Shown: in pieces, positions 33,473-61,298 of the stretch
Layout: every line of letters starts with the position of its first letter
Numbering within the stretch: the stretch's first letter is position 1
IMG/VR virus record: IMGVR_UViG_3300032242_002041
Span: 62,001 to 126,000 of that record
DNA: 64,000 nt
Reading direction: 5' to 3' (one strand)
The notes under the pieces: model-generated
Database searches by the model: none
Seen by the model: the letters and a program-made list of their open reading frames with translations, nothing else
What the model was told of the DNA's origin: nothing
Translations under genes and position numbers: made by a program

Positions 33473-33821
33473 TACGCTGTTAACCGAACAAGATTTTTGG
33501 GCAATCCTACAGGCTACGCCAGAACCTAAGCCAATATTCTATAGACTGTATTACAACAACGACGGTACTCCTATTATCTACAGCATGGAGGTGTTGCCTG
33601 GTAATTACATAGACGTTGATCAGCCGACTTATGTACTAGCACCGTTTAATGTTCGGGTAGTTGACGGCAAAATCACTTATATCAAACCAGTAATTACCGT
33701 TAAAAAATTACAGCCCAATGAATCAAATGGAACTGCGTGTGATCCCAGTGATGTATGCATAGTAGTCAATGCAGATCAACCACATACAAAATGGACGATA
33801 GTAACTAATGAAATTGATTGA
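33462..33821 (+). CDS. Hypothetical protein
   Basis: 119-aa ORF overlapping both neighbours by a few nt. Confidence 0.7.
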   Translation: MMSDTLLTEQDFWAILQATPEPKPIFYRLYYNNDGTPIIYSMEVLPGNYIDVDQPTYVLAPFNVRVVDGKITYIKPVITVKKLQPNESNGTACDPSDVCIVVNADQPHTKWTIVTNEID

Positions 33822-34725
33822 CACAGCAGACTTAGACTGCATTTACCTAACATATGATGAGCCAAACGCTGAAGAAAATTGGGTTAAGATTAAGAACATG
33901 GTACCATGGGCCCGCCGTGTGGATGGTGTTAAAGGGTCAGACGCCGCCCACAAAGCAGCCGCGGATGCTAGTGATACTGATCGATTTGTGCTTGTCGATG
34001 GCGACAACATTCCAGATCCTGCGTTCTTTAATCTTACGTTAACAGTAAACGAAGTATGCGTATATCGTTGGCGTGCCAAGAATCATATCAACGGCTTAAT
34101 GTACGGCAATGGTGGCTTAAGCGTATGGTCAAAAGAATTTGTTTATGCCATGCGTACACACGAAGCAACAGATGGCTCGGTAGAAAATGATGTAGAGTTT
34201 TGTTTCTATCCCAACTACTATGCCATGCATGACTGCTATTCAACAACATACCCTAACGGGTCGGCATTCCAGGCCTGGCGAGCAGGGTTCCGCGAAGGTG
34301 TTAAGATGTGCTTAAACAAAGGAGCACGTCCTACCTTGCAAGAGTTTAAGAACCGTGTACATCAACGCAACTTAGACCATTTGACCATATGGCATAACAT
34401 AGGACGCGATGTAGACAATGGCATCTGGGCAATAGCCGGCGCTCGTATGGGCACCTATATGACCATGATTACCCCACAGTGGGACTATCGTACTGTACAA
34501 GACTTTGCTGCATTAGAAGAACTTTGGGCAACAGTCAAAGATACTAATCCTGAGTTGTTGGCTGGACGTGTAGCCGAAGACCTAGCCACACAATTAGATT
34601 TACCAATGACCACTATACTAGGACCAGAGAGTACGTTCTTTAAACAACACTACCGTTCCAACTGGCACAACCAAGGTGTTATGATTAAAGAAATTGATGT
34701 GATTAGGAATCAAGAAGGATGGTAA
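33808..34725 (+). CDS. Glycosyltransferase, GT-A fold
   Basis: YDEPNAEENW, AHKAAA, VLVDGDN (DxD), NGLMYGNGG and AWRAGFREG. Confidence 0.65.
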   Translation: MKLIDTADLDCIYLTYDEPNAEENWVKIKNMVPWARRVDGVKGSDAAHKAAADASDTDRFVLVDGDNIPDPAFFNLTLTVNEVCVYRWRAKNHINGLMYGNGGLSVWSKEFVYAMRTHEATDGSVENDVEFCFYPNYYAMHDCYSTTYPNGSAFQAWRAGFREGVKMCLNKGARPTLQEFKNRVHQRNLDHLTIWHNIGRDVDNGIWAIAGARMGTYMTMITPQWDYRTVQDFAALEELWATVKDTNPELLAGRVAEDLATQLDLPMTTILGPESTFFKQHYRSNWHNQGVMIKEIDVIRNQEGW

Positions 34726-38776: not shown

Positions 38777-39842
38777 GTTAATTGTAGACACACACAGTGA
38801 AATTTACAGCATGATTCGTAATTGTGCTGATGGTATATTTTGGAATCTGGAACAGCATATTCAAAAAAATGAACTGGTGCCTGATGCAATTTATGTAATT
38901 GGTCGAGAACAAACACGCCTGTATAACAAACAACTGCGTACACTGATTGAAACCGCTGGCATAAAAGTTATCTTTAGTAATCCACACGAAGGGTCTGAAA
39001 CTTTAAAAAATCACTGTTATCAGTATGGCATTGCAGATTTGGTCTTGTCGGGTAAAATTTTATTAGTTGGTGGCGGTGATATGGAAAGCTTTTGGCCTCA
39101 TTTGCAGTATGATAGTTTTTTACCTAAAATTTTAAATTATGATGAAAATCTTTTGGCCATTGCAGATTACAAAGAAAAGTTTACAACACAACGTCCTTAT
39201 AAATTTTTGTTGCTGAATGGTCGAGCACGAGAACATAGAATACAACTGCTGGCTAAACTTGAAGGCATATTGGATCAAGCAATCTGGACCAATTTAGATT
39301 CTTCTGCTGGTCCTATACGACCGCTGGATCCAAGGTATGAATACAGCCATGTGATCAGCAACACACCACTGCCAGTTTCTGGATTTGTCAAACATCAGTT
39401 GTTTGATAACAAATGGGGCGATGTTTATATCAAACCAGAACTATATCAAGATACCTATTTTAGTATAGTTACCGAAACTGTGTTTGATTACCCGTACAGT
39501 TTTAGAACAGAAAAAATTTGGAAACCCATAGCAATTGGGCATCCTTGGATAGCAGTAGCCAACGCAGGCTTTTACAGAGACATGCACAATTTAGGATTTC
39601 AAACATTTAAAAACACAATCGATGAGTCATTTGATCAAATTGAAAACAATGCGGATCGTCTGGATCGCATCGCTCAAGTTGTTCTGGACTTATGTCAACA
39701 AGACCTTGTGACTTTTATAAAAGAGTGTTATAATGTATGTAAATACAATCAGCAACACCTTGCTGAACTAAGTCAAAAAGTTCCGCAAGAGTTCCCCAAC
39801 CGTTTTTTCCAATTTATTAAGAAATATCAATTCAATGAATGA
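38760..39842 (+). CDS. Putative glycosyltransferase (GT10-like TEK motif), paralog 2
   Basis: FLLLNGRAREHR; SIVTET..RTEKIWKP..HPWI..GFQTF..DESFD. Confidence 0.5.
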   Translation: MLGSRKLIVDTHSEIYSMIRNCADGIFWNLEQHIQKNELVPDAIYVIGREQTRLYNKQLRTLIETAGIKVIFSNPHEGSETLKNHCYQYGIADLVLSGKILLVGGGDMESFWPHLQYDSFLPKILNYDENLLAIADYKEKFTTQRPYKFLLLNGRAREHRIQLLAKLEGILDQAIWTNLDSSAGPIRPLDPRYEYSHVISNTPLPVSGFVKHQLFDNKWGDVYIKPELYQDTYFSIVTETVFDYPYSFRTEKIWKPIAIGHPWIAVANAGFYRDMHNLGFQTFKNTIDESFDQIENNADRLDRIAQVVLDLCQQDLVTFIKECYNVCKYNQQHLAELSQKVPQEFPNRFFQFIKKYQFNE

Positions 39843-46568: not shown

Positions 46569-46656
46569 AAATATTTACAATCGTATTACACTTGAAATTC
46601 GTTATCGCAAAAAGTTAAAAGAATTGCGCAAAAGAGATCCCTTTATCTACAAATGA
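46555..46656 (+). CDS. 33-aa basic peptide, copy 2; absent from the ORF track
   Basis: MSWIKNIYNRITLEIRYRKKLKELRKRDPFIYK*; ATGA overlap with the carbamoyltransferase start. Confidence 0.8.
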   Translation: MSWIKNIYNRITLEIRYRKKLKELRKRDPFIYK

Positions 46657-48107
46657 ATATTCTAGGTATTAGTGCAGGGTTTCATGACGCCTCTGCTACA
46701 GTAATCGACAGTGCAGGTAATATAGCGTATGCTGGACACGCAGAACGTTATAGCAAACGTAAGAATGACCCAGATTTACACCCAGCAATGTTTTGGGAAT
46801 TAGCCTGCGGACGTCATATTGATCATATTGCCTATTACGAAACTCCTTGGAAGAAACAGTTACGTCAACTATATTCAGGACAAGGTGTAGAGTGGTCAAA
46901 GTTAACTACTCATCAGATACTGAAGAAGCAACTGCAGGGATTCTTCAGCCATGTTCCTACTACAACATACAATCATCATTTAAGTCACGCAGCCGCAGGC
47001 TTTCAAACAAGTCCGTTTGATCAGGCCACAGTAGTTGTTATTGATGCCATTGGAGAGTGGGATACTATTAGTATTTTTGGAGCAGAATATAGTAGTGCAG
47101 GCCGCGCAACATACAAGCGGCTTTGGAGACAACGTTATCCTCAAAGCCTTGGATTATTTTATAGTGCTATTACAGAACGTATCGGTTTACGCCCAATGGA
47201 AGATGAATATATTACCATGGGCATGAGTGCTTGGGGTAAGCCTGCATATACCGATACCATGAGTATCCTGCTCAAAGAAAACTTGCACGTGGGCATTGAT
47301 CACATGTTCTTGCCTTTGGCACGAGACGTAGACATTGCCGCAAGTGCGCAGGCCATCATTGAACAAGAGATATATAGTGTAATGCAACGAGCCCGTGACT
47401 TTGGGTGGAGCTCAAATTTAGTATATCAAGGCGGAGTTGCACTTAACTGTCTTGCAAATAGATATCTTGGTGAATATTTTGAAGAAATATGGATTATGCC
47501 TAACCCTGGCGATGCTGGTAGCAGTCTTGGAGCTGCTGCCCTCGCCTATGGTGGGCCAATTAAGTTTGATCATGCATTCCTGGGTACAGAAATCAGCGGC
47601 GACTATCCTGTTGATGCCATCATCCGTAGCTTACTCAGGGATAAGATCGTTGGAGTTGCTTCAGGACGAGCCGAATTCGGTCCTAGGGCACTGGGTAATA
47701 GAAGTCTCCTCGCCGACCCCAGAGGACCGGATATAAAGGATCGAGTAAATGAAATCAAGCGTAGACAGCAATTTAGGCCATTTGCGCCGGTTATTCTGGA
47801 GGAATATGCTGATCAGTATTTTGATATCCCTAGTGGTTTCTGTGACACTAGGTATATGCAGGTCGTCGGTCGTTGTAGGCATCCTGACCTATTTCCTGCT
47901 ATTACCCACATTGACGGTACTAGTAGGATACAGACTGTGCCTAAAGACAGAAGTGGAATCAGACAGTTACTAGAAGCCTGGCATGACAGAACCAATTGCC
48001 CTATGTTATTAAACACCAGCCTTAACATACGCGGCGAGCCAATGGTAAACGATCGTCGAGATGCCGACCGTTTTGAACAGCTATACGGAGTCAAGGTACA
48101 TAGCTAA
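46653..48107 (+). CDS. O-carbamoyltransferase, NodU/CmcH/TobZ family
   Basis: HDASA, ERYSKRK, HHLSHAA, DAIGE, GGVALNC, GDAG, EFGPRALGNRS, RPFAP and NTSLNIRGEP. Confidence 0.95.
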   Translation: MNILGISAGFHDASATVIDSAGNIAYAGHAERYSKRKNDPDLHPAMFWELACGRHIDHIAYYETPWKKQLRQLYSGQGVEWSKLTTHQILKKQLQGFFSHVPTTTYNHHLSHAAAGFQTSPFDQATVVVIDAIGEWDTISIFGAEYSSAGRATYKRLWRQRYPQSLGLFYSAITERIGLRPMEDEYITMGMSAWGKPAYTDTMSILLKENLHVGIDHMFLPLARDVDIAASAQAIIEQEIYSVMQRARDFGWSSNLVYQGGVALNCLANRYLGEYFEEIWIMPNPGDAGSSLGAAALAYGGPIKFDHAFLGTEISGDYPVDAIIRSLLRDKIVGVASGRAEFGPRALGNRSLLADPRGPDIKDRVNEIKRRQQFRPFAPVILEEYADQYFDIPSGFCDTRYMQVVGRCRHPDLFPAITHIDGTSRIQTVPKDRSGIRQLLEAWHDRTNCPMLLNTSLNIRGEPMVNDRRDADRFEQLYGVKVHS

Positions 48108-48891: not shown

Positions 48892-50178
48892 ATGAATCCA
48901 CCAATATTTCCAATACAAACAGAAACAGGGTGTCTGCTTAAATGGGCCTGGAGTACTATATATCTAGGGCAGGGCAAGACAGCAAGTTGTCATAGAGTTG
49001 ATCAACATACAATAGATCCCAATAATGTTGGTAATTTTCATAATCAACCTGAAAAGATACTGGCCAGAGAATTAATGCTCGACGGTAAATGGCCTGGCAA
49101 AGGATGCGAATACTGTAAAAAAATTGAAGATGCCGGCGGCATGAGCGATCGTATATATCAGCTAGAACAAGTTGAAAACAATAAAAATTATGAAATAATT
49201 CCCAAGGCATTGGTAAACAATCCACAGGCCACTCATGTGGTTCCTACCATATTAGAGATATACTTTAACAATACTTGCAACATGAGCTGTTTATATTGTG
49301 GCAGTCATTTTAGCTCCAAGTGGGAAGAAGAAAATCGTCGATTTGGGGAATATCGTAGTGAACGCTTGCGCTTTGGCTACAACTTGGCACAGAATCCCAA
49401 TTATGAACAAATGCTAGCCGACTTCTGGACCTGGTTAGCAAAAGACAATAATTATTTACATATTAGACAATATCAAATAGCCGGAGGTGAACCCTTTTAT
49501 CAGAAAGAATTTGATCAGAGCATTGAATTTTGGGAACAGCATCCCAATCCTGATCTTACTTTCAATATGATAACTAATCTTAAAGTGGCACCCAAAAAGT
49601 TTCGCAGCTACATAGACAAGTTTGGTGACATGGTTCGCGATGGAAAGCTAAGGAAATTACAAATCAGCAGCAGCTTAGACTGCTGGGGCCCCGAACAAGA
49701 ATATGTGCGTTGGGGATTAGATCTCAGTGAATGGCAGGAAAATTTTGAATATCTATTAGATAAACCCTGGGTGCAACAGTGCATCAACAGTGCTGTTAGC
49801 GCACTTACTATAAAGACACTGCCAGAGTTAATTAAAAATATAATACAATGGAATAGTCAGGCAGAAGGAATAAAAAAAATATACTATAGTTTTATGAGTA
49901 TCATGTATCCTAAACAAATGGATCCTGCTATATTTGGCGCTGGCGTGTTTGACGATGACTTTGCACTGGTATTAGAATTAATGGATCAAATTCCTAATCC
50001 TTCGCCTGCTGATCGGTCCAGTAGAGCACACATGCAAGGTATAGCACAACAAATAGCACAAGCACCTAGAGATGTAAACAGCATTGAGTGTTTACAAGAA
50101 TATCTTACTGAACTAGATCGTCGCCGCGATACCAATTGGCGCGAGTTATTTCCCTGGTTAGATCGAGACTGGCGCTAA
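48892..50178 (+). CDS. Radical SAM protein with N-terminal twitch-like domain
   Basis: CLLKW..SCHR..CEYC; CNMSCLYC; AGGEP. Confidence 0.9.
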   Translation: MNPPIFPIQTETGCLLKWAWSTIYLGQGKTASCHRVDQHTIDPNNVGNFHNQPEKILARELMLDGKWPGKGCEYCKKIEDAGGMSDRIYQLEQVENNKNYEIIPKALVNNPQATHVVPTILEIYFNNTCNMSCLYCGSHFSSKWEEENRRFGEYRSERLRFGYNLAQNPNYEQMLADFWTWLAKDNNYLHIRQYQIAGGEPFYQKEFDQSIEFWEQHPNPDLTFNMITNLKVAPKKFRSYIDKFGDMVRDGKLRKLQISSSLDCWGPEQEYVRWGLDLSEWQENFEYLLDKPWVQQCINSAVSALTIKTLPELIKNIIQWNSQAEGIKKIYYSFMSIMYPKQMDPAIFGAGVFDDDFALVLELMDQIPNPSPADRSSRAHMQGIAQQIAQAPRDVNSIECLQEYLTELDRRRDTNWRELFPWLDRDWR

Positions 50179-51458
50179 AACCAAGGTGCCCATTCTGGCA
50201 CTACTTCAACTAGTGGTTTTTTACTCACTGAATCTTCCTTGCGAATGTGTCTAACAAATTGAGGTATAAACTCTGGACAATGCTCTGTGTATTCTATAAC
50301 ACTAATATAGCGATCAACTAATTCTCTATAATAGTTATCGTAAATAGTATCTGCAGAAAATCTAAGGCGCCCATTGGCAAGTCTTGATAACGCTAATTGT
50401 CTTAGTTCTGGTGGCAATGCGCCCACGCCTAAATGATCTACTCTAAACACCGGACTCACGTTAATATAACTACGCGGTAAATGTATAGGATAAGTGGGTC
50501 CAATTTTATTATCATATGCCCAATTAATAAAATCCATAATACTAGTAGCATTAATGGCAGACAATACGTAGTTAATAACTGTAGATATGCTAGGATGAAA
50601 CATCAGCTCTAAACTGTTGGCCTCAACGTCAGACCATCGACATCCTCTACGCTGATACTCTATAACTGATTCAGTGCCATCGATACTGACATTGTATATT
50701 ACTTGTTTAAAATGTTTGAACTTGTCCATCAGCTCGTTGGCACTGCTGCTAGCATTGGTCAGCAAAGTTATCATGATGTTTTTAGCTAGATCTTTTTCAA
50801 TCAAGTAATCCATTATTTTATGAACTTGTTTTTGTAGCGCAGTTTCGCCACCGGTAAAGTTAATAATTTCCACACGATCCAACACTGAATAAAAATCTGG
50901 GTCTGTAGGATTTAACACTATTTTTTCTTTACGTCCTAATACCTGAACTTCAAAGGTCTGTCGCTGACTACTGGCACCTCCGGCACACATAACACAACTA
51001 TAATTACAGTAATTACTTGGATAGTAATCTAAAGTAAGTATATCTTTAACTGTGTTATTATTGGAAACAATTTCTTGAACCTCTTTAACAATATCTACAC
51101 TAAGAAATTCACTGTAAAATTTGTTGTTCATTTGTCTAGGACTGGTTGCGCCCGCCTGTTCGTTGCGAGAACAACTTGCACAATCGGATATTTGTTCCAA
51201 TTGACCGTCGATCATGGCCTGACGTATACTGCGCCAATTTTCACTGTTTCTAGAATCTACAACACTGTTATTAATTACATCCCATTTATTGCGATTATTG
51301 CTCATCACAATACTACAAGGACGAACACTGTTAGGCAGGCTATCCACAGATGTAGGAACTACATTATTAGTTTGATAGAAAGCTCCGAAGAATGGGTACA
51401 AGCATATTTTTTCTCCTAGCTCGTTATATATGTGATCAAGTTGATTAATTGGATTCAT
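50175..51458 (-). CDS. Radical SAM protein with N-terminal twitch-like domain (start 51458 or 51482)
   Basis: CLYPF..RPCS..CASC; CNYSCVMC; TGGET; SIDG. Confidence 0.88.
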   Translation of the reverse strand: MNPINQLDHIYNELGEKICLYPFFGAFYQTNNVVPTSVDSLPNSVRPCSIVMSNNRNKWDVINNSVVDSRNSENWRSIRQAMIDGQLEQISDCASCSRNEQAGATSPRQMNNKFYSEFLSVDIVKEVQEIVSNNNTVKDILTLDYYPSNYCNYSCVMCAGGASSQRQTFEVQVLGRKEKIVLNPTDPDFYSVLDRVEIINFTGGETALQKQVHKIMDYLIEKDLAKNIMITLLTNASSSANELMDKFKHFKQVIYNVSIDGTESVIEYQRRGCRWSDVEANSLELMFHPSISTVINYVLSAINATSIMDFINWAYDNKIGPTYPIHLPRSYINVSPVFRVDHLGVGALPPELRQLALSRLANGRLRFSADTIYDNYYRELVDRYISVIEYTEHCPEFIPQFVRHIRKEDSVSKKPLVEVVPEWAPWF

Positions 51459-52545
51459 GGCATATTTCTTTAAGACTTGCATTGTATATTATGTTTAAGC
51501 CTTGGCTAGTTACACGATTATATACTTGTTTTAGTTCAGCTATGGCTTGTTGGTGTTCAGGGTGAGCAGAGTTGCCCACAACATCGTGATTTAAATAGTC
51601 ATCCCAGGTTCCCCAATCTTCTAATCTATTAATAATACCTTGAAATCCATAGTGTGTACATAAATCAACAAATTGTTGTTGATCATTCCAATTGCCTTTT
51701 TGCAAGACAAATTTAAGTAACACATGTGCATTAGTCTGTCGAACTAGGTCCTGCAAAAAATCTAAATTTTTAATTAATTGATCAAAGCGACCCGGTTGTC
51801 GCACTTGTTCGTATACGTCGGCTGACCCGGCATCTATACTAATATAATATTGTGTAATATTGTTAACAATAGAATTGTTGTCCAATTGCTTGGATAATAA
51901 TAATCCATTGGTAAACAAACGCAAACTATGATTACTTTTGGGCTGATAGTTATGTAATAATGGACGCATAATGTTGCTGGCCAGTGGATCACCGTTGCCC
52001 GTCATTATTATGTGTGTAGGAGCATCAAATTTTTCTAATAACTCAATCACGTGATTTACCATGGCCAATCGACGGTCGTAATCAGCTCCAGAATTAGACA
52101 TGATCGGATGAGCCCTACAACTAGGACAAGCTAAATTGCAACTGTCGTCAATATTGATACTAATATAGTAGCAACGATAACTTTTGTCTATAGTCTTACT
52201 AGGACTGACAGCAGCATAATTGTTGGTCAATCGATCAGAATTTAATATTCCACAACGATCTACCGCACAATGAGTAAACTTGCGATCATCAATATCTTTT
52301 TGTAAACTACGAGCTACAGGACTAAGCCAAATGTCTTCTAGTCTAGAAAAGTTCATGATATTGCCCACTGACATGGGTAACCAAGCTTCGCATGCACAGA
52401 CAAAACATTCGCCTTTTCGGTCAATGACTAGGGTATATGATGGAAAATCACAGTGATTGGTAATGTTGAGTTTTAAATCTTTATTACGTGGTATATTAGT
52501 ATAACTGTGTTGATTGTCAATGGGAATTATTGGGTATGTATACAT
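51445..52545 (-). CDS. Radical SAM protein, divergent subtype with N-terminal Cys domain
   Basis: CDFP..CFVCAC..HCAVDRC; CNLACPSC; GNGDPL; FTNG; SIDAG. Confidence 0.88.
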   Translation of the reverse strand: MYTYPIIPIDNQHSYTNIPRNKDLKLNITNHCDFPSYTLVIDRKGECFVCACEAWLPMSVGNIMNFSRLEDIWLSPVARSLQKDIDDRKFTHCAVDRCGILNSDRLTNNYAAVSPSKTIDKSYRCYYISINIDDSCNLACPSCRAHPIMSNSGADYDRRLAMVNHVIELLEKFDAPTHIIMTGNGDPLASNIMRPLLHNYQPKSNHSLRLFTNGLLLSKQLDNNSIVNNITQYYISIDAGSADVYEQVRQPGRFDQLIKNLDFLQDLVRQTNAHVLLKFVLQKGNWNDQQQFVDLCTHYGFQGIINRLEDWGTWDDYLNHDVVGNSAHPEHQQAIAELKQVYNRVTSQGLNIIYNASLKEICHESN

Positions 52546-53657: not shown

Positions 53658-54809
53658 TCATCGCATGCTAGGATTAAAAATCTTGTCATAGTTTGTGCCT
53701 CTTGACTGATCTAAAGCAGACACATATTCTCTAAATTGTCGAAATAACTCGTTACTAAACACAGTATTTTTTAAATTCAAAACAGCAGACTTTACAGAGT
53801 CTGAAATATACGTATTATTTTTGGCCCATAAAATAAATCTATCTAAATCTTCTGGAGGAATAGATTCAGGAACAAGACATTGATTTCCTTGTACATAGGT
53901 CAAAGTCAACTCCATGCTATTTTTTTCACACCAATCTATCAGTGGAGGAAGAGAGTATGCGCTGGTATGCTGTAGCACATGATGAACACGATTTAACCGT
54001 ATGTTGGTAGTGTTTTTAATACGCTGAATATTATTTTCAATTTCTGCCCAGCAACTTGGATATCTTAGATAATCATTCATTGCTCCTGTTCCTTCTAAAC
54101 TTATAATCAAGTCTAAATTTTCAAATGGTTCTAGTTTAGCTATTAACCGGTTTGGAATCTTGCTAAAGTTGGTAGTACTCTGAAGAGTAACATCAGTGCG
54201 ATTTAAATTAACTAATTCGTCAAGTAAATTTAAAGTGCCTGGCATGGTCAATGGCTCGCCACCTGACAGATTTATTCTACGGGCTGTAGCCAAATGTGGA
54301 CGTATAAATTTTAAAAATTCAGGATCTTCCCAGGTATTGGCAACTGGCGCAACCAGTGTATGCTCTTTTATTGCAGTTACATTTTTAAATATATCTTGGT
54401 GTTTAACTAGCTCAGTATACCAGGTTGAACTGGCTGAGCTAGAACACATTATACAAGCAAGATTACAATGGGTTCCCATTCTGAATTCTAAATCATAGGT
54501 ATCAAACGAATCATTATTGTAGCCATCTCGATTGTTGGAAACGTTTCTCAGACTAGTATATCCAATATTTTCTTCATTCCAGCAATGAGAACATTCTTTA
54601 ACTCTATTTCCTTGTACAAGTTCGTTGATTAATTTGGGCTTAAATTCAGTCTGATATCGATCAAACTCTTGCCAACTTATTGAGGATTCATAATATGTTT
54701 TGTACTGGCAACATGGTGATAATGATTTACCGTCATGAGATATAGCCAGCCCATGATTAATTAAAGAACAAGTTATTTTTTCAGATTGAGTCATTGATTT
54801 AAAATTCAC
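53658..54809 (-). CDS. Radical SAM protein with N-terminal twitch-like domain
   Basis: CSLI..SPCC..CSHCW; CNLACIMC; SGGEP. Confidence 0.9.
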   Translation of the reverse strand: MNFKSMTQSEKITCSLINHGLAISHDGKSLSPCCQYKTYYESSISWQEFDRYQTEFKPKLINELVQGNRVKECSHCWNEENIGYTSLRNVSNNRDGYNNDSFDTYDLEFRMGTHCNLACIMCSSSASSTWYTELVKHQDIFKNVTAIKEHTLVAPVANTWEDPEFLKFIRPHLATARRINLSGGEPLTMPGTLNLLDELVNLNRTDVTLQSTTNFSKIPNRLIAKLEPFENLDLIISLEGTGAMNDYLRYPSCWAEIENNIQRIKNTTNIRLNRVHHVLQHTSAYSLPPLIDWCEKNSMELTLTYVQGNQCLVPESIPPEDLDRFILWAKNNTYISDSVKSAVLNLKNTVFSNELFRQFREYVSALDQSRGTNYDKIFNPSMR

Positions 54810-55890
54810 GGAGCATGGCCTGAAGTTCTTGCCATAATACGTCAGTTAGACCACCATTATAAAAATGATTAAAGTTATGCTCTACTATGGGCAAACAAGC
54901 GCGGTGTATCGCTCGACGTTCTTTTACGCTTAATGTATCTAATTCTTTTAACAATTTAGTAACACGTTCTATTCTGAGTATATCATCTGTTTCTGTATCG
55001 TAGCTTTCATCAAATATGCCTGCAAAAGTTTGAAATCCATATTCACGCATATACTCTAAACTGCCAGCAGGTGCTACTAGAACAAATGGCATTTCTAAGG
55101 CAATTGCTTTAAATGTCTTTTCGGTTATGTGCTGTCTGCGTCCAAAGTAAACAGTTTCAGTAGGAACATATACTAGACTATCCTGCGCTTCAGTAAAGTT
55201 ACTCAGCCAGCAACTTGTCATTTCCTGTTGCTCTTCGCCACGAAATAGTCTTGGCAGTTTGGCCTGCTCAAACACATCGGTTATATCCTGGTATACATGT
55301 TGATACTTTTGTGCTATAATAGATATATCCACATTCTCATATTGGCAAGTTCTGGGCGCACTAATATGATTATGTTCTAATTGATTTTTGAATACGTTAT
55401 ATAAGAACAACACACGATGATCACGCTTGCCTGCTACAATACGATTGGGACTCATGAAGGTTTGAGTAGGAGTTCTTTCACTGGCTCTGGGAATCAAGAA
55501 AGTTTTATCATATCCACGAAACCAGTCTTGACAAGCCCAACCATGAAAGAAATAGTAGTGTGTGCGCCAACCGTATTGGGCAGAAAGTTGTTCAACATAT
55601 TCTCCACGCTCACTAACTACAATATGTCCAGGTGGATTATTGGGCCAATTGATATCTTTGTTGCGTTCAAGCACCTCCGTAAACAACGGTTTGTGTAGAT
55701 CCAAATGAACAGGTTCTTGATCATGCAAATACACATAGTCGTTTTCTGTGATATCGTCACGCCCTAGATTAAATAAGTGATCACTGTCAGTATGCCCAAA
55801 CGGATCACAAAAGAATACTCTTGTGCCCGGCCTATGTTGATTAAACCAAGGCCAAAATGTATTGTTGTAAATTTCATCTATTCTAATCAT
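54799..55890 (-). CDS. Putative glycosyltransferase (GT10-like TEK motif), paralog 3
   Basis: FMSPNR..RDHR; VPTET..ITEKTFK..MPFV..YGFQTF..DESYD..R. Confidence 0.5.
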   Translation of the reverse strand: MIRIDEIYNNTFWPWFNQHRPGTRVFFCDPFGHTDSDHLFNLGRDDITENDYVYLHDQEPVHLDLHKPLFTEVLERNKDINWPNNPPGHIVVSERGEYVEQLSAQYGWRTHYYFFHGWACQDWFRGYDKTFLIPRASERTPTQTFMSPNRIVAGKRDHRVLFLYNVFKNQLEHNHISAPRTCQYENVDISIIAQKYQHVYQDITDVFEQAKLPRLFRGEEQQEMTSCWLSNFTEAQDSLVYVPTETVYFGRRQHITEKTFKAIALEMPFVLVAPAGSLEYMREYGFQTFAGIFDESYDTETDDILRIERVTKLLKELDTLSVKERRAIHRACLPIVEHNFNHFYNGGLTDVLWQELQAMLREF

Positions 55891-58800
55891 GTTTGACGTA
55901 TTTTATTCTGGAACAAAACCTAACTTATTTGCACACGAGCGCGAAGCACGTGATATTCAACACGCACAAGAATTAAGTCGGACTCGTTACTTTTGGTGGG
56001 TAAACTATTTAACTGACTACTCGAGCTTTGACTTTTTATTTGAGCCAGTTCCTTGGGAAGCAGACTATACACACACTTGGCCCAGTCGGTGGCATGAGTA
56101 TTCTGGAACCTTTTTAGTTCCTAAGCATAACACGAATATAGATTATAAGTTCCATAAGGAAATACTTCCTTTAAAAGAATTAAAAGAACATTACTTGATT
56201 AATCATCCCTGCGAGTTTGATTGGACTTGGCATCCACATCCGATGGATCCGCCATATAATTATGTATTTGGTAATCAGTGGTATCCGGCTAATCGTATGT
56301 CTACTGTTGAATACCGTCTGCCAGGCGCAACAGAAACAAAGTATATTTTTACTCCTAGAGCACAACTATTACCCAAACTGGGCAGTCAATGGCAAACTCT
56401 AGCAGACTGTGAGTTTGATTATTCATGGAGACCAGATCCGGGCGACGCACCTTACATTTATGTATTTGGTAATCAGTGGTATCGTGCAGAGATCATGTCC
56501 ACAGTGGAATATCATGTTCCTGGTGCTACTGAGCGTAAGTACATTCCTTATCCTCGAGCTCGGCTAGTAGAAAATACCGCTAATTGGTCGGTGCCCACAG
56601 GTGTTGACAGCGTAGATTATACTTGGGTTCCGGATCCAGGAGATCCGCCATATATCTATCAATTTGGTACGCAACATCAAGCTACTGGTGGCCCGCAATA
56701 TTGTGTACCTGGAGCAACTGACATAAAGTATGTTAGTGTGTTTAGAGCAACAATTAATAGTGTTAACATGGACATGTGGACAACTTCAGATGACGTCACT
56801 GACTTTGATTATACCTGGCATCCTGATGATCGCGACCCTGCTTACATATATCAATTTGGTACACAACATCAAGCTACCGGTGGCCCCGAATACCGTGTCA
56901 CGGGCGCAACAGAAATGAAGTATGTTAGTGCTCCTAGAGCCAGTATTAGTAGTGTTGATATGACTAATTGGACAACACCCAATGATGTCACTGACTTTGA
57001 TTATACCTGGCATCCTGATGATCGCGACCCTGCTTACATATATCAATTTGGTACACAACATCAAGCTACCGGCGGTCCTAGATACGTTGTGCCTGGTGCT
57101 ACAGAAATAAAGTATGTTAGTGCTCCTAGAGCCAGACGTACTCGAGTAGACGATTGTTGGACTATTCCCAAAAATACTAATCTTGAAGCATTTGATTTAA
57201 CATGGCATCCAGACAGCCGCGAGTCTGCCTACATATATCAGTTTGCTACACAATGGAATCGTGCAGGCGGCCCTACATATCGTGCGCCAGGCGCCACTGA
57301 GATAAAATATGTTACAGCACAGGTAGCCAAGATGCTACCCACTGATCTGAACTGGGTAATACCTGCAGGTATAGACGTTAACAGTTTTGACTTTAGCTGG
57401 ACTCCTGACACTACAGAAGCTCCGTACATATACGAGTTTGGTACACAGTGGCAAAAAACTGGTGGTCCAAGATATATAGTTCCGGGCGCAACAGAAATAA
57501 AATACGTTACAGAACCTAGAGCACATAAAAACGTTAAAGATGCGTGTTGGACTGTGCCCGATGGTGCTGATGTAGACAGCTTTGATTGGACCTGGCATCC
57601 TGATGCTACTGAACAGCCTTACATATATCAGTTTGGCACACAGCATCAACGCACAGGAGGCCCACAGTACCGTGTTCCTGGAGCAACAGATACAAAGTAT
57701 GTAGATCAAATACGCATTAAGACTGATCGTGTTGCCACAGCTATCTATGAAATAGATCACATGGATGGCAACGCTGGACAAATATTGGATGCTGTTAAAA
57801 CAGTACGCTACTTTGACAATTACCTGGATACACTAAAGCGCATAGCCAAGAACATTCCTGACGACCAGGAGTTTGTTTGGATTTGTTCAAGTGTATGTGA
57901 CTACTCTGACTTTGACTTTACCTGGCATCCTGAGGTATGGCAAGCAGGTATGTTGCACGTATTTCCTAGCGACGGACAAAAGTTTGGTGATACATTCTTT
58001 ATGCATGTTCCTACATTTAAGTATCGTAGTGAAAAGCTACAATTACTTGATTGGTACGATATAAACTTTATGGATAAGAATGTGCCGCGTCGCCCTTTGC
58101 CTGTTGTTAACCATACATATGATACACACGTAGACGCAGTTAAGAGCTTGGACTTTAAAGGACCGTTGGCTATTTTTACTACCCAAGATTCAACCTACTG
58201 CAACATAAATCACTTGCTCACTGATAATACACCAGCTGTTCCGTTATGGCGTGAAAAGACCAAGACTGTTGTTCCGTTAAGTGCAGGCGCCAGTATTTGT
58301 ATTGTGCCCAAGGTCTCAGTTCCTTATATTAAACATCAGTTATACGACTATCCTAACGTACTCCGCACCCAGCGTCATCTGTTTAAAGATCAACTGTTAG
58401 ATATAGTGTTTATCGACAACGGCGAACCCAACGCAGAAGAAAATTATCAACACTTAAAATGGACAGCTGAACGTGCCAATGACATTAAGATACATCGTAG
58501 TAGTGGTGTCACAGGTCGTGTGGCTGCTTATCAAGCTGCCGCAGAGTTAAGCACAACACCTTGGTTCTTTGCTGTATTTGCCAAGTTAAGAGTCGACGAA
58601 GGGTTTGACTGGGCATGGCAACCAGATCGTCTACAAGAATCCAAGCACTATATCTTTCATGCACGTAATCCTGTTAACGGATTAGAATACGGACATCAAG
58701 CCATGATTGCCTACAACAAGAAACTAGTGTTGGCAAACGCCGGGGACGGACTAGACTTTACCCTAGATCAAGCGCACGAAGTAGTTCCTATCTTGTCCGG

Positions 58801-59086
58801 TACAGCAGAATATGCGTACACACCTTGGATGGCCTGGCGCACTGCTTTCCGCGAATGTATTAAGCTACGAGCCAGTGCGGATGTAGAAAGCAAGTATCGC
58901 TTGGACAAATGGTTAACAGTTGATCTAACGCATTCCAACGGTGAATATAGTATATTCGGGGCCCAAGATGCTGTGGAGTACTACGAAGCGGTTGCGGGAG
59001 ATTTTGCGGAGCTAAAGCGGAGCTATGATTGGGCTTGGCTAGCTAGTTACGCATTGATAAAGCGGAATCTAATACCGAGTCAATGA
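55889..59086 (+). CDS. 1065-aa protein with eight ~64-aa repeats and a C-terminal GT-A-like domain
   Basis: Repeat FDxTWHPD..YIYQFGTQ..TGGPxYxVPGATExKYV; C-terminus matches 33808 (EPNAEEN, NGLEYG, AWRTAFRE). Confidence 0.75.
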   Translation: MFDVFYSGTKPNLFAHEREARDIQHAQELSRTRYFWWVNYLTDYSSFDFLFEPVPWEADYTHTWPSRWHEYSGTFLVPKHNTNIDYKFHKEILPLKELKEHYLINHPCEFDWTWHPHPMDPPYNYVFGNQWYPANRMSTVEYRLPGATETKYIFTPRAQLLPKLGSQWQTLADCEFDYSWRPDPGDAPYIYVFGNQWYRAEIMSTVEYHVPGATERKYIPYPRARLVENTANWSVPTGVDSVDYTWVPDPGDPPYIYQFGTQHQATGGPQYCVPGATDIKYVSVFRATINSVNMDMWTTSDDVTDFDYTWHPDDRDPAYIYQFGTQHQATGGPEYRVTGATEMKYVSAPRASISSVDMTNWTTPNDVTDFDYTWHPDDRDPAYIYQFGTQHQATGGPRYVVPGATEIKYVSAPRARRTRVDDCWTIPKNTNLEAFDLTWHPDSRESAYIYQFATQWNRAGGPTYRAPGATEIKYVTAQVAKMLPTDLNWVIPAGIDVNSFDFSWTPDTTEAPYIYEFGTQWQKTGGPRYIVPGATEIKYVTEPRAHKNVKDACWTVPDGADVDSFDWTWHPDATEQPYIYQFGTQHQRTGGPQYRVPGATDTKYVDQIRIKTDRVATAIYEIDHMDGNAGQILDAVKTVRYFDNYLDTLKRIAKNIPDDQEFVWICSSVCDYSDFDFTWHPEVWQAGMLHVFPSDGQKFGDTFFMHVPTFKYRSEKLQLLDWYDINFMDKNVPRRPLPVVNHTYDTHVDAVKSLDFKGPLAIFTTQDSTYCNINHLLTDNTPAVPLWREKTKTVVPLSAGASICIVPKVSVPYIKHQLYDYPNVLRTQRHLFKDQLLDIVFIDNGEPNAEENYQHLKWTAERANDIKIHRSSGVTGRVAAYQAAAELSTTPWFFAVFAKLRVDEGFDWAWQPDRLQESKHYIFHARNPVNGLEYGHQAMIAYNKKLVLANAGDGLDFTLDQAHEVVPILSGTAEYAYTPWMAWRTAFRECIKLRASADVESKYRLDKWLTVDLTHSNGEYSIFGAQDAVEYYEAVAGDFAELKRSYDWAWLASYALIKRNLIPSQ
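56795..57072 (+). repeat. Exact 86-nt direct repeat at a 192-nt period within the coding repeat array
   Basis: 56795-56880 is identical to 56987-57072. Confidence 0.9.
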
Positions 59087-60128
59087 TATACTCAACTTCC
59101 AAGTCGGTAAGTTCAGGATGAATAGGTAAACTTAATACTCTACGTGATAGTGCGCTAGCAACACTTAGGATATCGGGGCCAGCAAACTCACTATAAGCAG
59201 GCAACTCGTGTAGGGGTTCTCGATAGTGAATCCTAGTTTCGATTCCTTTGATAGCCAAGTTTCGAGCAAGTATATCTCTACCGTCTACATCAATAACAAA
59301 CTTGTGACACGAATGTGTTTCAAAGTTTTGTGCTGTAATTAAACTTCTAATGCCGGTATTCTTTAACCGACCAATCCAGTACAAGGCAATGTTCTTACGG
59401 CGGTCCTGCCATTGATCAATATACCGTGTTTTAATCATCATTTGGGCGCATTCTACCTCGCTCATACGACTGTTAGTTCCTATGGTTGAATGATTGGGCT
59501 TGCCGTTGTTAGTCCATTCTCTAGCAAATTCTAATAGATCTATGTCGTCTGTGACCACTGCACCCCCGTTACCGTAGGCATTTAAGTTTTTCATTGGATC
59601 AAAACTAATAGCAGTAGCGTTGCCTACTCTATTACAATTGTTGCTTAACCAATGCTGAGCACCGTCTTCTATGATCAAGTCCGTTCCCCAGAAACGGTCT
59701 GCATTGACAGCCGCACCGTATAAGCCAACCAACACTGTTGCCTGTACACTTAGTTCTTGTGGTATTTTTTTCTTATCTAACAGGCCGTGTGTATCTGTGT
59801 CAGCAATATATACTTCCCAACCAGCACGGACAAATGCACTAGCAGTGGCCACATAAGTCATTGCGGGTACAACTACCCTGGGCGGGTTTACACTAGTTTG
59901 TAATCGATAGTATTCAGCAATTATTTCTAATGCTTGACTACCCGAGTGACAAGTTACAGCATATTTGCTATGATTTTTCTTGGCCAACCAGTTTTCAAAT
60001 TCAGCTGTATAGTTACCAGCCATGAGTTGACCACTACGAAGGACTTCGTCGGTAGCATCTAATATCTCTGTGCGGAGATTATTATACTGCTTTTTTAATC
60101 CCGTAAAAGGAATCTTTAAGCCATTCAT
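59043..60128 (-). CDS. DegT/DnrJ/EryC1/StrS PLP-dependent sugar aminotransferase
   Basis: SGSQAL, EDGAQ, SFDPMKNL.AYGNGG, GTNSRM and LSLPIHP. Confidence 0.93.
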   Translation of the reverse strand: MNGLKIPFTGLKKQYNNLRTEILDATDEVLRSGQLMAGNYTAEFENWLAKKNHSKYAVTCHSGSQALEIIAEYYRLQTSVNPPRVVVPAMTYVATASAFVRAGWEVYIADTDTHGLLDKKKIPQELSVQATVLVGLYGAAVNADRFWGTDLIIEDGAQHWLSNNCNRVGNATAISFDPMKNLNAYGNGGAVVTDDIDLLEFAREWTNNGKPNHSTIGTNSRMSEVECAQMMIKTRYIDQWQDRRKNIALYWIGRLKNTGIRSLITAQNFETHSCHKFVIDVDGRDILARNLAIKGIETRIHYREPLHELPAYSEFAGPDILSVASALSRRVLSLPIHPELTDLEVEYIIDSVLDSALSMRN

Positions 60129-61062
60129 AGTATTCTTGGAACCCTTGTTCTATATCAATTTCTGGAGTATAACCAAAGTCCTGGTGTGCTCTTTGTGTAT
60201 TTAACTGACCACGGTTAGGAAAGTTTTCGTCAGGATCACGCACTTCAATTGTGCCTTGCCCTGCTATACTGACTGCCAGTTTAGCTGCTTCTAATAGAGT
60301 TTTAGAGTTCCCACGAGTTATGTTGTAGGTGGTGTTATAGGTATCTTCACTAATGGCGGCTTCAGCAATACCTTCGGCTGCATCAGAAACATAAGTAAAA
60401 TCTAGTTCCTGATTACCACCACGCACCTGTATAGCGTGGCCGCGCATGGCATCTAATAGGAATTTTGATACTACACGATCTTCTACATCAAGTGGGCCAT
60501 ATACTGCACTGGGTCTTATAATAGTGTGTGCCATGTTGGTACGCCTGCTGTAATCACGGACTAGCCATTCTCCGGCCAACTTCATTATACCATACTGCCC
60601 AATTGGATTGGTTGGATGACTTTCGTTGACGCCATCAAAGTAGGTATCATTGAAATTGCCATAGACCATACTTGAGCTAACATAAACAAATTTTTGTACA
60701 CGATGTTTAACGCTGGCTTCTAACAGGTTAAGCAAGCCCTCACTCATGGACCGTGAGCCCAGCTGTGGGTCGGCATTGACTACTTTTTGTCTAGGGAAAC
60801 TGGCTAGGTGTACAACAATATCAGGACGATGCTCACCAATTAGCCAGGCAATACCGTCGCGGTCCGTGATGTCAATGCCGTAGATTCTATCAGTTTTAAT
60901 TTTTTTCTTACGTTCACAAATTAGATAATCTAGCTCGTCTTGAGGTATAATGCCATAGGTTGTCTGCGTATCAGTGATGATGCAGGTGTGTCCTTGACTT
61001 TCTAACAAGGCCACAACATTATGCCCTATAAAGCCAAGTCCACCAGTTACAAGTATTTTCAT
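60082..61062 (-). CDS. NAD-dependent nucleotide-sugar epimerase/dehydratase; start revised to 61062
   Basis: ILVTGGLGFIG, SSSMVYG, YGIMK, RPSAVYGP and DFTYVSD; ATGA overlap with the upstream stop. Confidence 0.92.
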   Translation of the reverse strand: MKILVTGGLGFIGHNVVALLESQGHTCIITDTQTTYGIIPQDELDYLICERKKKIKTDRIYGIDITDRDGIAWLIGEHRPDIVVHLASFPRQKVVNADPQLGSRSMSEGLLNLLEASVKHRVQKFVYVSSSMVYGNFNDTYFDGVNESHPTNPIGQYGIMKLAGEWLVRDYSRRTNMAHTIIRPSAVYGPLDVEDRVVSKFLLDAMRGHAIQVRGGNQELDFTYVSDAAEGIAEAAISEDTYNTTYNITRGNSKTLLEAAKLAVSIAGQGTIEVRDPDENFPNRGQLNTQRAHQDFGYTPEIDIEQGFQEYYEWLKDSFYGIKKAV

Positions 61063-61298
61063 TTGCCCCACCGTAGTAAATATTCTGTTGCTAATCGATC
61101 TTCAAGTTGACCGTAGACAATAATTCTATGTCCCCAACGATGATCGTCTGGCCGTACAATGTATTGTGGATCTGGACAATTGGCTTTAATCCACTGTCCT
61201 TGTTCTGTCTGCATAAACTTGTACAATGGTTCCGCGGCATAGAGCTCTGGATCCTCTACATCGCCCATGGTAAAGGAGTGGAATGTAATCTTCTGCAT
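61059..61298 (-). CDS. Hypothetical protein
   Basis: 79 aa with its own promoter; coupled to the epimerase. Confidence 0.7.
   Translation of the reverse strand: MQKITFHSFTMGDVEDPELYAAEPLYKFMQTEQGQWIKANCPDPQYIVRPDDHRWGHRIIVYGQLEDRLATEYLLRWGK

What the first reader, a model, noticed from the sequence alone, without database searches (positions are those of the whole stretch)
55889..59086. Repeat-array protein fused to an apparently inactive copy of the 33808 glycosyltransferase
Seen: eight tandem ~64-aa aromatic-rich repeats (about 56180-57720). Repeats 4 and 5 share an exact 86-nt stretch, so expansion is recent. The FDxxWxP core also recurs in the flanking domains. The C-terminal domain aligns with 33808 but has FAVFAK where 33808 has VLVDGD, so the DxD is lost. 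Inference: a scaffold or molecular ruler that partners the active GT, with repeat number possibly setting glycan length or valency.
Basis: partly seen in the sequence, partly recalled or inferred. Interest (0 to 1): 0.65.

Follow-up and report, generated by a model that had tools for sequence, protein, structure and literature searches.

The report
Variable-repeat glycosyltransferase-like protein of jumbo phages
A freshwater jumbo-phage gene encodes a protein built from three glycosyltransferase-like modules and a stalk of 65-residue beta repeats; relatives carry about 0 to 25 repeats, and the catalytic metal-binding motif is always replaced by a lysine, so this looks like an undescribed, length-tunable part of a phage sugar pathway.

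Summary
ORF 55889-59086 (1065 aa) holds eight tandem 64-66-aa repeats. Repeats 4 and 5 share an exact 86-nt tract. The FDxxWxP motif recurs in all three flanking domains. The C-terminal domain is a GT-A fold (Z 10-12) homologous to ORF 33808, with FAK where 33808 has DGD.

New findings:
- The window is part of a 228-kb T4-like jumbo-phage record.
- The protein belongs to a phage-only family: 152 clusters among 1.84 billion representatives, with no Pfam, NCBIfam or PHROG model.
- Family length follows a ladder of about 534 + 65n aa, with n = 0 to about 25. Repeat number changed at least 41 times among 81 loci.
- The gene always sits between the same neighbours (an unannotated 363-aa gene, then DegT aminotransferase and an SDR enzyme).
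- The 86-nt tract reflects concerted evolution and unequal crossover, not a recent duplication.
- All 265 members examined have Lys at the third DxD position. Bacterial and phage relatives without repeats keep an invariant DxD.
- Other conserved polar positions are retained, so "inactive" is unproven. A metal-independent or donor-binding module is at least as likely.
- A partnership with 33808 found no support.

The repeats have no structural match. Function remains inferred.

The parts
55889..59086 (+). Whole ORF, 1065 aa (P0001). Its ATG overlaps the divergent start codon of the upstream gene in a CATG at 55888-55891, and its 3' end overlaps the convergent DegT gene by 44 nt.
   Evidence: the same arrangement is seen in L003
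55889..56215 (+). N-terminal domain, aa 1-109: a small alpha/beta module with a weak GT-A-like fold. It has a degenerate copy of the repeat motif (FDF at aa 47) and NYL where a DxD would sit.
   Evidence: AF2 model pLDDT 92. All 50 best VIA matches over residues 1-97 are GT-A or nucleotidyltransferase folds, Z 4.8-6.4. Homologous to the middle domain: hhalign 97.35%, E 1.6e-11.
56216..57775 (+). Array of eight 64-66-aa repeats (aa 110-629). Consensus FDxSWHPDPxDPPYIYxFGTQW..GGxxYxVPGATExKY; three beta strands per repeat.
   Evidence: no PDB or Atlas match outside the family
56795..56880 (+). First copy of the exact 86-nt tract (start of repeat 4).
   Evidence: It forms its own unitig at depth 103, against 57-64 for the flanks, in the probable source run.
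56987..57072 (+). Second copy of the exact 86-nt tract (start of repeat 5).
57776..58387 (+). Middle domain, aa 630-833: an alpha/beta module that starts like the N-terminal domain and holds one repeat-like element (FDFTWHPE at aa 675). It has SSV where a DxD would sit.
   Evidence: AF2 model pLDDT 91.5; hhalign to the repeat profile and to the N-domain. Its fold was barely tested by the structure searches.
58388..59083 (+). C-terminal GT-A-fold domain, aa 834-1065, a distant paralogue of ORF 33808.
   Evidence: VIA Z 9-12 over model residues 205-350 against B4GALNT1, WrtF, SpsA, chlorovirus HAS, STIV A197 and PBCV-1 A64R; Foldseek ArnC/RmlT/SunS/TarS; BLASTP E 5e-8 to 33808
58577..58585 (+). 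FAK (aa 897-899) at the DxD position. Lys899 is invariant in the family.
   Evidence: 265 of 265 members have K; FAK in 227
33808..34725 (+). ORF 33808 (P0002, 305 aa): a DGD-bearing GT-A-like paralogue. It is extremely conserved among relatives (82-92% identity in the listed hits).
54799..55890 (-). Divergent 363-aa neighbour with no family hit; two paralogues at 36414 and 38760. Syntenic in 79 of 84 loci.
59043..60128 (-). Convergent DegT/DnrJ/EryC1-type sugar aminotransferase. Syntenic in 79 of 84 loci.
60082..61071 (-). NAD-dependent epimerase/dehydratase (SDR). Syntenic in 77 of 84 loci.

Best explanation
SHOWN. The gene belongs to a T4-like freshwater jumbo myophage and encodes a soluble multi-module protein made by internal duplication of GT-A-type material. 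It has a small N-terminal GT-A-like module, a stalk of 65-aa three-stranded beta repeats, a middle module homologous to the N-terminal one, and a full C-terminal GT-A domain. The repeats are amplified copies of the element that follows the 'DxD strand' in each module. In relatives the stalk has any number of repeats from 0 to about 25, while the end modules and the gene's neighbours stay fixed. Repeat number changes by in-register unequal recombination inside a tract that gene conversion keeps identical. The C-terminal domain belongs to a monophyletic clade of an unnamed GT-A superfamily in which DxD became x-x-Lys.

INFERRED. The C-terminal module is not a decayed enzyme. It is a non-canonical module in which Lys899 takes over the charge role of the metal at the donor's phosphates, so it still binds, and probably still transfers from, a nucleotide- or phospho-sugar without Mn2+. 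It works in the phage's amino-sugar glycan pathway (DegT aminotransferase, SDR dehydratase, carbamoyltransferase, many radical-SAM enzymes). The repeat stalk sets the distance between the N-terminal module and the middle and C-terminal modules, or adds binding sites. This would adapt the enzyme to a polymeric or surface-bound acceptor whose geometry differs between phage lineages.
For: Architecture and folds. Internal homology. Ladder of about 534 + 65n aa with n = 0-13 in 84 IMG/VR loci, and up to 21-25 repeats in protein searches. Lability: at least 41 changes of repeat number on a tree of 81 loci, and pairs 83-93% identical in the C-terminal region with n = 2 against 8 or 3 against 12. Recombination mechanism: an 86/86 identical tract followed by 68/115; positional orthology of repeats 1-8; lineage-specific residues shared by repeats 4 and 5 within each of three relatives, and a repeat-3/repeat-5 chimera in a 6-repeat relative whose repeat 1 is 100% identical. 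Conservation of the C-terminal 436 aa at 45-85%. K invariant in 265 of 265, while D-x-D is invariant in 27 repeat-less relatives from phages and bacteria. Shared invariant polar residues in both clades: E846, N927, the NGLxYG loop, and WRxxFRExxK. K clade monophyletic, SH-aLRT 100. Synteny with sugar enzymes in 77-79 of 84 loci. Precedents for active DxD-less GT-A enzymes that use basic side chains or none (PMC7185993; WrtF, PMC12595478, which is also the second-best structural match).
Against: No activity, ligand or partner has been measured. Loss of DxD is the classical mark of a dead GT-A, and the YG-x-GG stretch of DxD-bearing relatives is changed to YGHQA in this clade. Equating the invariant FRE with the xED catalytic base, and NGLxYG with the G-loop, rests on position in the alignment and predicted secondary structure. 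Model coordinates could not be inspected. The rigidity and length per repeat of the stalk were not measured. High conservation would also fit a non-catalytic binding role. The acceptor is unknown.
Confidence: 0.4

Rival explanations
1. One reading: the C-terminal domain is a catalytically dead pseudo-glycosyltransferase. The protein is a scaffold or molecular ruler that binds an active transferase (33808 or another), and repeat number sets glycan chain length or valency.
For: DxD is lost in all 265 members. Repeat number is highly variable while the ends are fixed. A DGD paralogue co-occurs in the same genomes and even on an 18.9-kb contig. Pseudo-GT partners such as COSMC are known (PMC7185993), and the CHSY3-CHPF complex is among the structural matches.
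Against: The complex prediction with 33808 gave no verdict and is no evidence either way. 33808 lies 22 kb away in another clade of the superfamily. The conserved neighbours are different genes. COSMC lost both DxD and xED, whereas here the other conserved polar positions are kept and an invariant Lys was gained.
Confidence: 0.22
2. The repeat array is a tolerated, recombination-prone linker whose length has no function. Number variation is neutral drift produced by unequal crossover, and only the end modules matter.
For: Forms with n = 0 and n = 1 are the commonest in the IMG/VR sample, so the protein works without any repeat. The recombination mechanism is evident. Repeat number shows only partial phylogenetic signal.
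Against: Repeats keep about 25 of 65 positions conserved, including polar ones (D2, Q21, K42 and the PGATExKY motif), across a family whose members are as little as 37% identical. Positional orthologues are 80-95% identical. All arrays stay in frame, with whole-unit steps only. AF2 predicts an ordered, confidently packed array: pLDDT 92, pTM 0.74.
Confidence: 0.2
3. The protein is a virion or other structural component. A GT-fold module would be used for binding a glycan (as in vaccinia H3), displayed on a repeat stalk of variable length, for example as an adhesin or decoration under host-driven diversification.
For: The sugar island lies directly downstream of the baseplate and fibre genes. 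Repeat-number variation is typical of exposed phage proteins. Vaccinia H3 is among the fold matches of the N-terminal module.
Against: The immediate, conserved neighbours are sugar-nucleotide enzymes, not structural genes. There is no PHROG structural family hit and no fibre-like or trimerisation features. The gene forms a separate unit on the opposite strand from its neighbours.
Confidence: 0.1

Closest known systems
GT-A fold (GT2-like) glycosyltransferases such as SpsA, WrtF, B4GALNT1, ArnC, TarS and chlorovirus hyaluronan synthase
   Same: The C-terminal domain has the alpha/beta/alpha Rossmann-like GT-A fold (VIA Z 9-12 with 130-145 residues aligned). It has an acidic residue after strand 1 (EPNA), a Gly-containing loop, and a conserved acidic residue on the following helix.
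   Different: It reaches no Pfam or NCBIfam model. DxD is replaced by x-x-Lys in every member. It is fused to two further degenerate GT-A-like modules and a repeat stalk.
Metal-independent GT-A enzymes (GT14 C2GnT-L, bacterial GT6 BoGT6a, WrtF)
   Same: GT-A fold without a functional DxD. In GT14, basic side chains take the place of the metal (PMC7185993; PMC3516806 and PMC12595478).
   Different: No sequence relationship. Here the Lys sits at the DxD position itself. Activity is untested.
Pseudo-glycosyltransferase partners (COSMC/C1GALT1C1; CHPF in the CHSY-CHPF complex)
   Same: A DxD-less paralogue coexists with a DxD-bearing one in the same genome.
   Different: COSMC lost both DxD and xED. 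This family keeps the other conserved polar positions. No interaction was predicted, and the two paralogues are distant.
Molecular-ruler enzymes of O-antigen synthesis (WbdD/WbdA, WbbB coiled-coil rulers; PglH ruler helix). Recalled from established literature, not tested here.
   Same: A spacer of defined length between functional modules could set product length. Here the spacer length varies in discrete units between lineages.
   Different: Those rulers are coiled coils or a helix of fixed length within a species. Here the spacer is a beta-repeat array of 0 to about 25 units in phages. No link to chain length is shown.
TarS/TarP/RmlT wall-teichoic-acid glycosyltransferases
   Same: A GT-A catalytic domain combined with tandem beta-rich domains that bind or organise a polymeric acceptor. 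TarS, TarP and RmlT are among the fold matches.
   Different: Domain order is reversed, the beta domains are unrelated, and repeat number is fixed in those enzymes.
Standalone DxD-bearing members of the same unnamed superfamily (Ralstonia phage RsoM2USA gp348; Parvibaculum, Dongia, Salinispora, Micromonospora, Nocardia, Streptomyces proteins)
   Same: 27-34% identity over the whole C-terminal domain, with shared motifs EPNA, NGLxYG and WRxxFRE.
   Different: They are 230-320 aa with no repeats and an invariant D-x-D. All are annotated as hypothetical.

Membership tests
GT-A fold glycosyltransferases | alpha/beta/alpha Rossmann-like GT-A fold | tested here: met
   AF2 model pLDDT 91.5. VIA Z up to 11.9 with rmsd 2.8-3.9 over 130-145 residues, and 58 chains with Z >= 8, nearly all GT-A or nucleotidyltransferase folds. 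Foldseek E about 1e-3 to GT2 enzymes.
GT-A fold glycosyltransferases | DxD metal- and donor-binding motif at the end of strand 4 | tested here: not met
   FAK at aa 897-899. K is in third place in 265 of 265 members and no Asp occurs. Relatives outside the clade have an invariant DxD.
GT-A fold glycosyltransferases | G-loop and xED catalytic base on the alpha-F helix (PMC7185993) | tested here: inconclusive
   Invariant NGLxYG (N927-G935) and WRxxFRExxK (W983-K992) are shared with the DxD clade. The latter lies on the helix predicted after the central strand. Equivalence to the G-loop and xED was not verified in 3D.
GT-A fold glycosyltransferases | Glycosyl transfer activity | not testable with these tools
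   Needs biochemistry.
Pfam GT2 families (Glycos_transf_2, Glyco_tranf_2_3) | Score above the gathering threshold | tested here: not met
   P0001 has no GT family hit at E <= 1. P0002 scores 16 bits against a 27-bit cut-off for Glyco_tranf_2_3.
Pseudo-GT scaffold (COSMC-like) | Loss of both DxD and the catalytic base, plus binding to an active paralogue | tested here: inconclusive
   DxD is lost. The candidate base E989 is kept. Complex prediction with P0002 gave no verdict.
Molecular-ruler polysaccharide enzymes | Spacer length determines product chain length | not testable with these tools
   Only the variation of spacer length is shown. The product is unknown.
Known repeat or carbohydrate-binding module families | Sequence or fold match of the 65-aa repeat to a described family | tested here: not met
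   No Pfam, NCBIfam or PHROG hit. No PDB sequence hit. No Foldseek or VIA match over the repeats. Atlas matches only the protein's own family. The exhaustive profile search found 152 clusters, nearly all of the full-length ones with this same architecture.

The most novel reading that the evidence does not exclude
The repeat stalk is a modular beta-repeat 'ruler' or processivity track. Each 65-aa unit would add a fixed distance, or one binding site for a glycan repeat unit, between a priming or terminating module and a metal-independent transferase module. Unequal recombination would then let phage lineages re-tune the length or spacing of a virus-made glycan in discrete steps. This would be a genetically programmable chain-length device of a kind not described for any glycosyltransferase.
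Probability: 0.12. Interest if true: 0.85.

Novelty: new variant of a known kind. Interest (0 to 1): 0.55.

Why it matters
Phage-encoded glycosylation of virions, DNA or host envelopes is emerging as a major factor in host range and immune evasion, but almost nothing is known for uncultured jumbo phages. This family is a fixed element of a large sugar island in a widespread freshwater jumbo-phage clade.

It offers a natural series of alleles with 0 to about 25 repeats in an otherwise constant protein. That is an unusually clean system for testing whether spacer length controls a glycan product or acceptor reach.

The invariant DxD-to-Lys change, set against DxD-bearing relatives in cultured bacteria, is also a clear test case for how GT-A enzymes become metal-independent or turn into pseudoenzymes. 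Finally, the repeat itself is a candidate new fold or module, derived from a piece of the GT-A domain.

Tried and rejected
- Pfam, PHROGs and NCBIfam scans of the protein and of four diverse homologues gave only noise: acetate kinase, LAG1, and Whi5 short-motif hits on the repeats.
- tblastn against 50,697 GenBank phage records found only a standalone DGD homologue in Ralstonia phage RsoM2USA and no repeat protein. Megablast of the region found nothing.
- PDB sequence searches with the repeat profile and the C-domain profile found nothing meaningful.
- Foldseek, VIA and Atlas fold searches found no partner for the repeats.
- Complex prediction of aa 630-1065 with ORF 33808 returned 'no answer' (ipSAE 0.00). 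This is neither evidence for nor against binding.
- DNA hypermodification as the target was considered. No thymidylate-synthase/hydroxymethylase or ThyX family gene was found in the 228-kb record, which is only 66% complete, so this has no support.
- A T4-type late promoter (TATAAATA) upstream of the gene was sought. The motif is absent from the whole window.
- Laying Logan contigs of four runs gave no bridging contig across the array and no reliable repeat-number variant. It showed only that the 86-mer is a two-fold-depth unitig. No RNA run holds the gene.
- The 'moraphage' paper (PMC12619734) and a huge-phage envelope preprint do not describe this protein. Whether the clade is the same could not be settled.
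- The N-domain against the DxD clade by hhalign is in the expected register but not significant: probability 6%.


Full report
WHAT IS THERE

The ORF at 55889-59086 (+) encodes 1065 aa. A motif scan and a repeat finder place eight tandem units at aa 110-629 (nt 56216-57775), with periods of 64-66 aa. Pairwise identity between units is 35-72% in protein and 56-79% in DNA. The exact 86-nt identity (56795-56880 equals 56987-57072) is real. The FDxxWxP core recurs at aa 47, 675 and 906. BLASTP aligns aa 837-1026 with aa 9-213 of ORF 33808 (28% identity, E 5e-8), and FAK lies opposite DGD.

THE GENOME AND THE LOCUS

The window is part of a 228-kb IMG/VR virus record estimated to be 66% complete. 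The window also carries these genes:
- a late sigma factor;
- a gp5-like baseplate hub;
- a gp6-like baseplate wedge (phrog_10646, E 9e-279);
- a 4454-aa ORF;
- a fibre with an intramolecular-chaperone domain.

The nearest cultured phages, judged by the wedge protein, are Atu_ph07, Phosso and the Rak2-like jumbo myoviruses, at only 33-34% identity. The runs that hold the DNA are metagenomes, one labelled freshwater.

From about 29 kb to 62 kb the window is a sugar island. It contains:
- two SDR epimerase/dehydratases;
- a UDP-glucose-dehydrogenase-like gene;
- a DegT aminotransferase;
- a NodU-like carbamoyltransferase;
- about ten paralogous N-terminal-twitch radical-SAM genes (NF033640);
- several unannotated families.

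In 84 related loci from IMG/VR the gene keeps the same neighbours. The 363-aa gene lies divergently upstream in 79 of 84. DegT lies convergently downstream in 79 of 84. The SDR follows in 77 of 84. This holds whatever the repeat number.

THE FAMILY AND THE LADDER

A word-based search found more than 3125 relatives, all unnamed, with lengths of 800-1855 aa in steps of about 65 aa. A repeat HMM counts 4-24 units in them. That search cannot see proteins shorter than 586 aa, so I scanned IMG/VR with the C-terminal alignment. The 84 loci give a clean ladder:
- about 534 aa with no repeat (10 loci);
- about 600 aa with one (20 loci);
- about 668, 737, 800, 864, 930, 1000, 1067, 1130, 1200, 1262, 1330 and 1395 aa for n = 2 to 13.

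An exhaustive profile search with the repeat alone found only 152 clusters at E <= 0.001 among 1.84 billion representative proteins. The longest has 25 matched stretches in 2248 aa. Nearly all full-length hits have the same N-terminal and C-terminal modules; two weak hits (P0347, P0398) carry neither module and may be unrelated. No repeat was found beside the bacterial homologues of the C-terminal domain. The repeat is therefore essentially confined to one phage protein architecture.

On a tree of the C-terminal 436 aa of 81 loci, repeat number needs at least 41 changes; 200 label shuffles need 47-60. Pairs that are 83-93% identical in that region differ by as much as n = 2 against 8 or 3 against 12.

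HOW THE NUMBER CHANGES

The 86 identical bases are followed by only 68/115 identities. Each of the eight repeats finds its best match in the same ordinal repeat of two relatives that are about 80% identical overall. Repeats 4 and 5 therefore both predate that split.

Within each of three relatives, repeats 4 and 5 share an identical N-terminal half carrying lineage-specific residues. Their C-terminal halves stay distinct and orthologous. This is concerted evolution by gene conversion.

One 6-repeat relative has repeats 1 and 2 that are 100% and 97% identical to those of the window. Its third repeat is the N-terminal half of repeat 3 joined to the C-terminal half of repeat 5. That is the exact product of an in-register unequal crossover removing two units.

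In the Logan assembly of the probable source run the 86-mer is a separate unitig at roughly twice the depth of its flanks.

DOMAIN ANATOMY

Two AlphaFold2 models built with family alignments are confident: aa 630-1065 has pLDDT 91.5 and pTM 0.87, and aa 1-437 has pLDDT 92.1 and pTM 0.74.
- C-terminal domain. Model residues 205-350, which are protein residues 834-980, match many GT-A glycosyltransferases at Z 9-12. These include B4GALNT1, WrtF, SpsA, chlorovirus hyaluronan synthase, STIV A197, PBCV-1 A64R and GnT-I. GT-A-like nucleotidyltransferases match as well. Foldseek agrees at E about 1e-3.
- N-terminal domain. All 50 best VIA matches for residues 1-97 are again GT-A or nucleotidyltransferase folds, but at Z 4.8-6.4, which alone is weak.
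- Repeats. Each is three beta strands, with no match in the PDB or the Atlas outside the family.

Profile-profile comparison ties the parts together. The repeat profile matches the middle domain at aa 675-737 (97.1%, E 5.7e-11). The N-terminal domain matches the middle domain at aa 661-707 (97.35%, E 1.6e-11).

In all three modules the FDxxWxP element directly follows the strand that carries DxD in canonical GT-A enzymes. That strand ends in NYL, SSV and FAK respectively. I read the protein as three GT-A-derived modules, with the post-DxD element of the first module amplified in tandem. The GT-A ancestry of the N-terminal and middle modules is an inference. The sequence link of the N-domain to the DxD clade is in register but not significant.

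THE C-TERMINAL DOMAIN IS A LYSINE VARIANT OF AN UNNAMED SUPERFAMILY

A scan of one genome per prokaryotic species found repeat-less homologues of 230-320 aa at 27-34% identity. They occur in Parvibaculum, Dongia, Salinispora, Micromonospora, Nocardia and Streptomyces, and in several MAGs. Ralstonia phage RsoM2USA gp348 is another. All of them, and the ORF 33808 family, have D-G/A-D, and both Asp residues are invariant in a 27-sequence alignment reaching down to 25% identity.

The repeat-bearing family forms one clade with a long stem (SH-aLRT 100; four members were mislabelled by my script, as the alignment shows). Among 265 members the triplet is FAK (227), PAK, NAK, FGK, NGK, PGK, FPK, WGK or FSK. 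The Lys is always present and an Asp never is.

The C-terminal 436 aa are 45-85% identical across the family. Both clades share invariant D838, E846, N927, L932, Y934, G935, W983, R984, F987, R988, E989 and K992. The Lys clade also has invariant residues of its own, including D913, D956 and H963.

ORF 33808 sits in a different clade, so the fused domain is a distant paralogue and not a recent copy.

INTERPRETATION

Shown:
- the architecture;
- the phage-only distribution;
- the ladder and its recombinational mechanism;
- the fixed locus among sugar-nucleotide enzymes;
- the GT-A fold;
- the invariant DxD-to-Lys change.

Inferred: what the protein does.

Loss of DxD abolishes canonical Mn2+-dependent donor binding. 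However, GT14 and bacterial GT6 enzymes lost DxD independently and remain active, GT14 by using basic side chains. COSMC, the textbook pseudo-GT scaffold, lost both DxD and the xED base (PMC7185993). WrtF, the second-best structural match here, works without metal (PMC12595478).

In this family a Lys is fixed at the very position of the metal-ligating Asp, and the other polar residues shared with DxD-bearing relatives are kept. I therefore favour a module that still binds a nucleotide- or phospho-sugar without metal and probably still transfers from it (confidence about 0.4 for the whole mechanism). In this reading the stalk sets reach or the number of binding sites toward a polymeric or surface-bound acceptor.

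The rivals, with my estimates, are:
- a functionally neutral linker (0.20), which fits the abundance of n = 0 and n = 1 forms but not the strong conservation of about 25 of 65 repeat positions;
- a structural or adhesin role (0.10).

The complex prediction with ORF 33808 gave no verdict and counts neither way.

COMPARISON WITH KNOWN SYSTEMS AND NOVELTY

The fold criterion for GT-A is met and the DxD criterion is not. The G-loop and xED criteria are inconclusive. The protein reaches no curated family model. I therefore do not file it as a member of any described GT family. It is a new variant of the GT-A kind, joined to a repeat module with no described relative.

Functionally it resembles three things:
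- metal-independent GT-A enzymes;
- GT-A enzymes with beta-rich polymer-binding tails (TarS, TarP, RmlT);
- in the most novel reading, the coiled-coil molecular rulers of O-antigen synthesis.

None of these relationships is homology.

CAVEATS
- Model coordinates could not be inspected, so the position of Lys899 in the pocket and the rigidity of the stalk are not verified.
- The middle domain's fold was barely tested.
- All family members are metagenomic. No host, transcript or product is known.
- The host lead is weak: two contigs carrying both paralogues are binned in a Haliscomenobacter MAG, and there is no Shine-Dalgarno sequence before the start codon.
- No alternative genetic code was used.

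Noticed in passing
window 2-1222(-), 37361-38776, 39835-41172, 41153-42412, 42409-43626, 43613-44908, 48892-50178 (+), 50175-51482, 51445-52545, 53658-54809 (-): About ten paralogous radical-SAM genes lie in one 64-kb window. The two that were scanned match NCBIfam NF033640 (N-terminal twitch-domain radical SAM; E 1e-64 and 5e-98). A similar radical-SAM gene sits next to the DGD homologue in Ralstonia phage RsoM2USA. This is an unusual expansion, presumably of sugar-tailoring enzymes.
   Followed up: partly
window 15153-28517 (+): A 4454-aa ORF lies directly after the gp6-like baseplate wedge gene and before a fibre gene with a Peptidase_G2 intramolecular-chaperone domain (29332-30351). It is probably a giant baseplate or fibre protein and a candidate glycosylation target.
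   Followed up: no
whole window: The T4 late-promoter octamer TATAAATA does not occur at all on either strand. About 6.5 +/- 2.2 occurrences are expected from shuffles, and a gp55-like late sigma factor is encoded at 2281-3372.
   Followed up: no
window 55888-55891: The start codons of this gene and of the divergent 363-aa gene overlap in the palindrome CATG, which leaves no intergenic promoter region. No Shine-Dalgarno sequence precedes the ATG. The same overlap is present in locus L003.
   Followed up: partly
window 33808-34725: ORF 33808 is extraordinarily conserved. All 8000 scored candidates matched, and the best 120 are 82-92% identical. All are unnamed. It appears to be a core gene of a very abundant uncultured phage group.
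   Followed up: partly
window 36414-37364, 38760-39842, 54799-55890: Three paralogous proteins of 316-363 aa have no Pfam, NCBIfam or PDB sequence hit. One of them is the strictly syntenic divergent neighbour of the repeat protein.
   Followed up: partly
window 46653-48107: A NodU-like carbamoyltransferase (E 2.6e-38) suggests that the phage glycan is carbamoylated. It is syntenic in 64 of 84 related loci.
   Followed up: no
L005, L006, L039, L040 (two contigs of 148 and 183 kb of a Haliscomenobacter MAG); L007 (Pacearchaeota MAG); L008 (Fischerella MAG): Phage-like contigs that carry the repeat protein, and in some cases the DGD paralogue too, are binned into cellular MAGs. This is either mis-binning or a weak host hint toward Bacteroidota.
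   Followed up: partly
window 56881-56986: In the probable source run, the unitig between the two 86-nt copies has depth 44.5, against 57-63 for the flanks. This could mean that part of the population has one repeat fewer, but contig depths are too crude to tell.
   Followed up: no
L016 (Salinispora pacifica), L013 (Parvibaculum sedimenti): The bacterial DxD-bearing homologues lie among unannotated genes. In Salinispora a GT2-like gene and an FkbM methyltransferase are nearby, so the family is likely glycan-related in bacteria too.
   Followed up: partly
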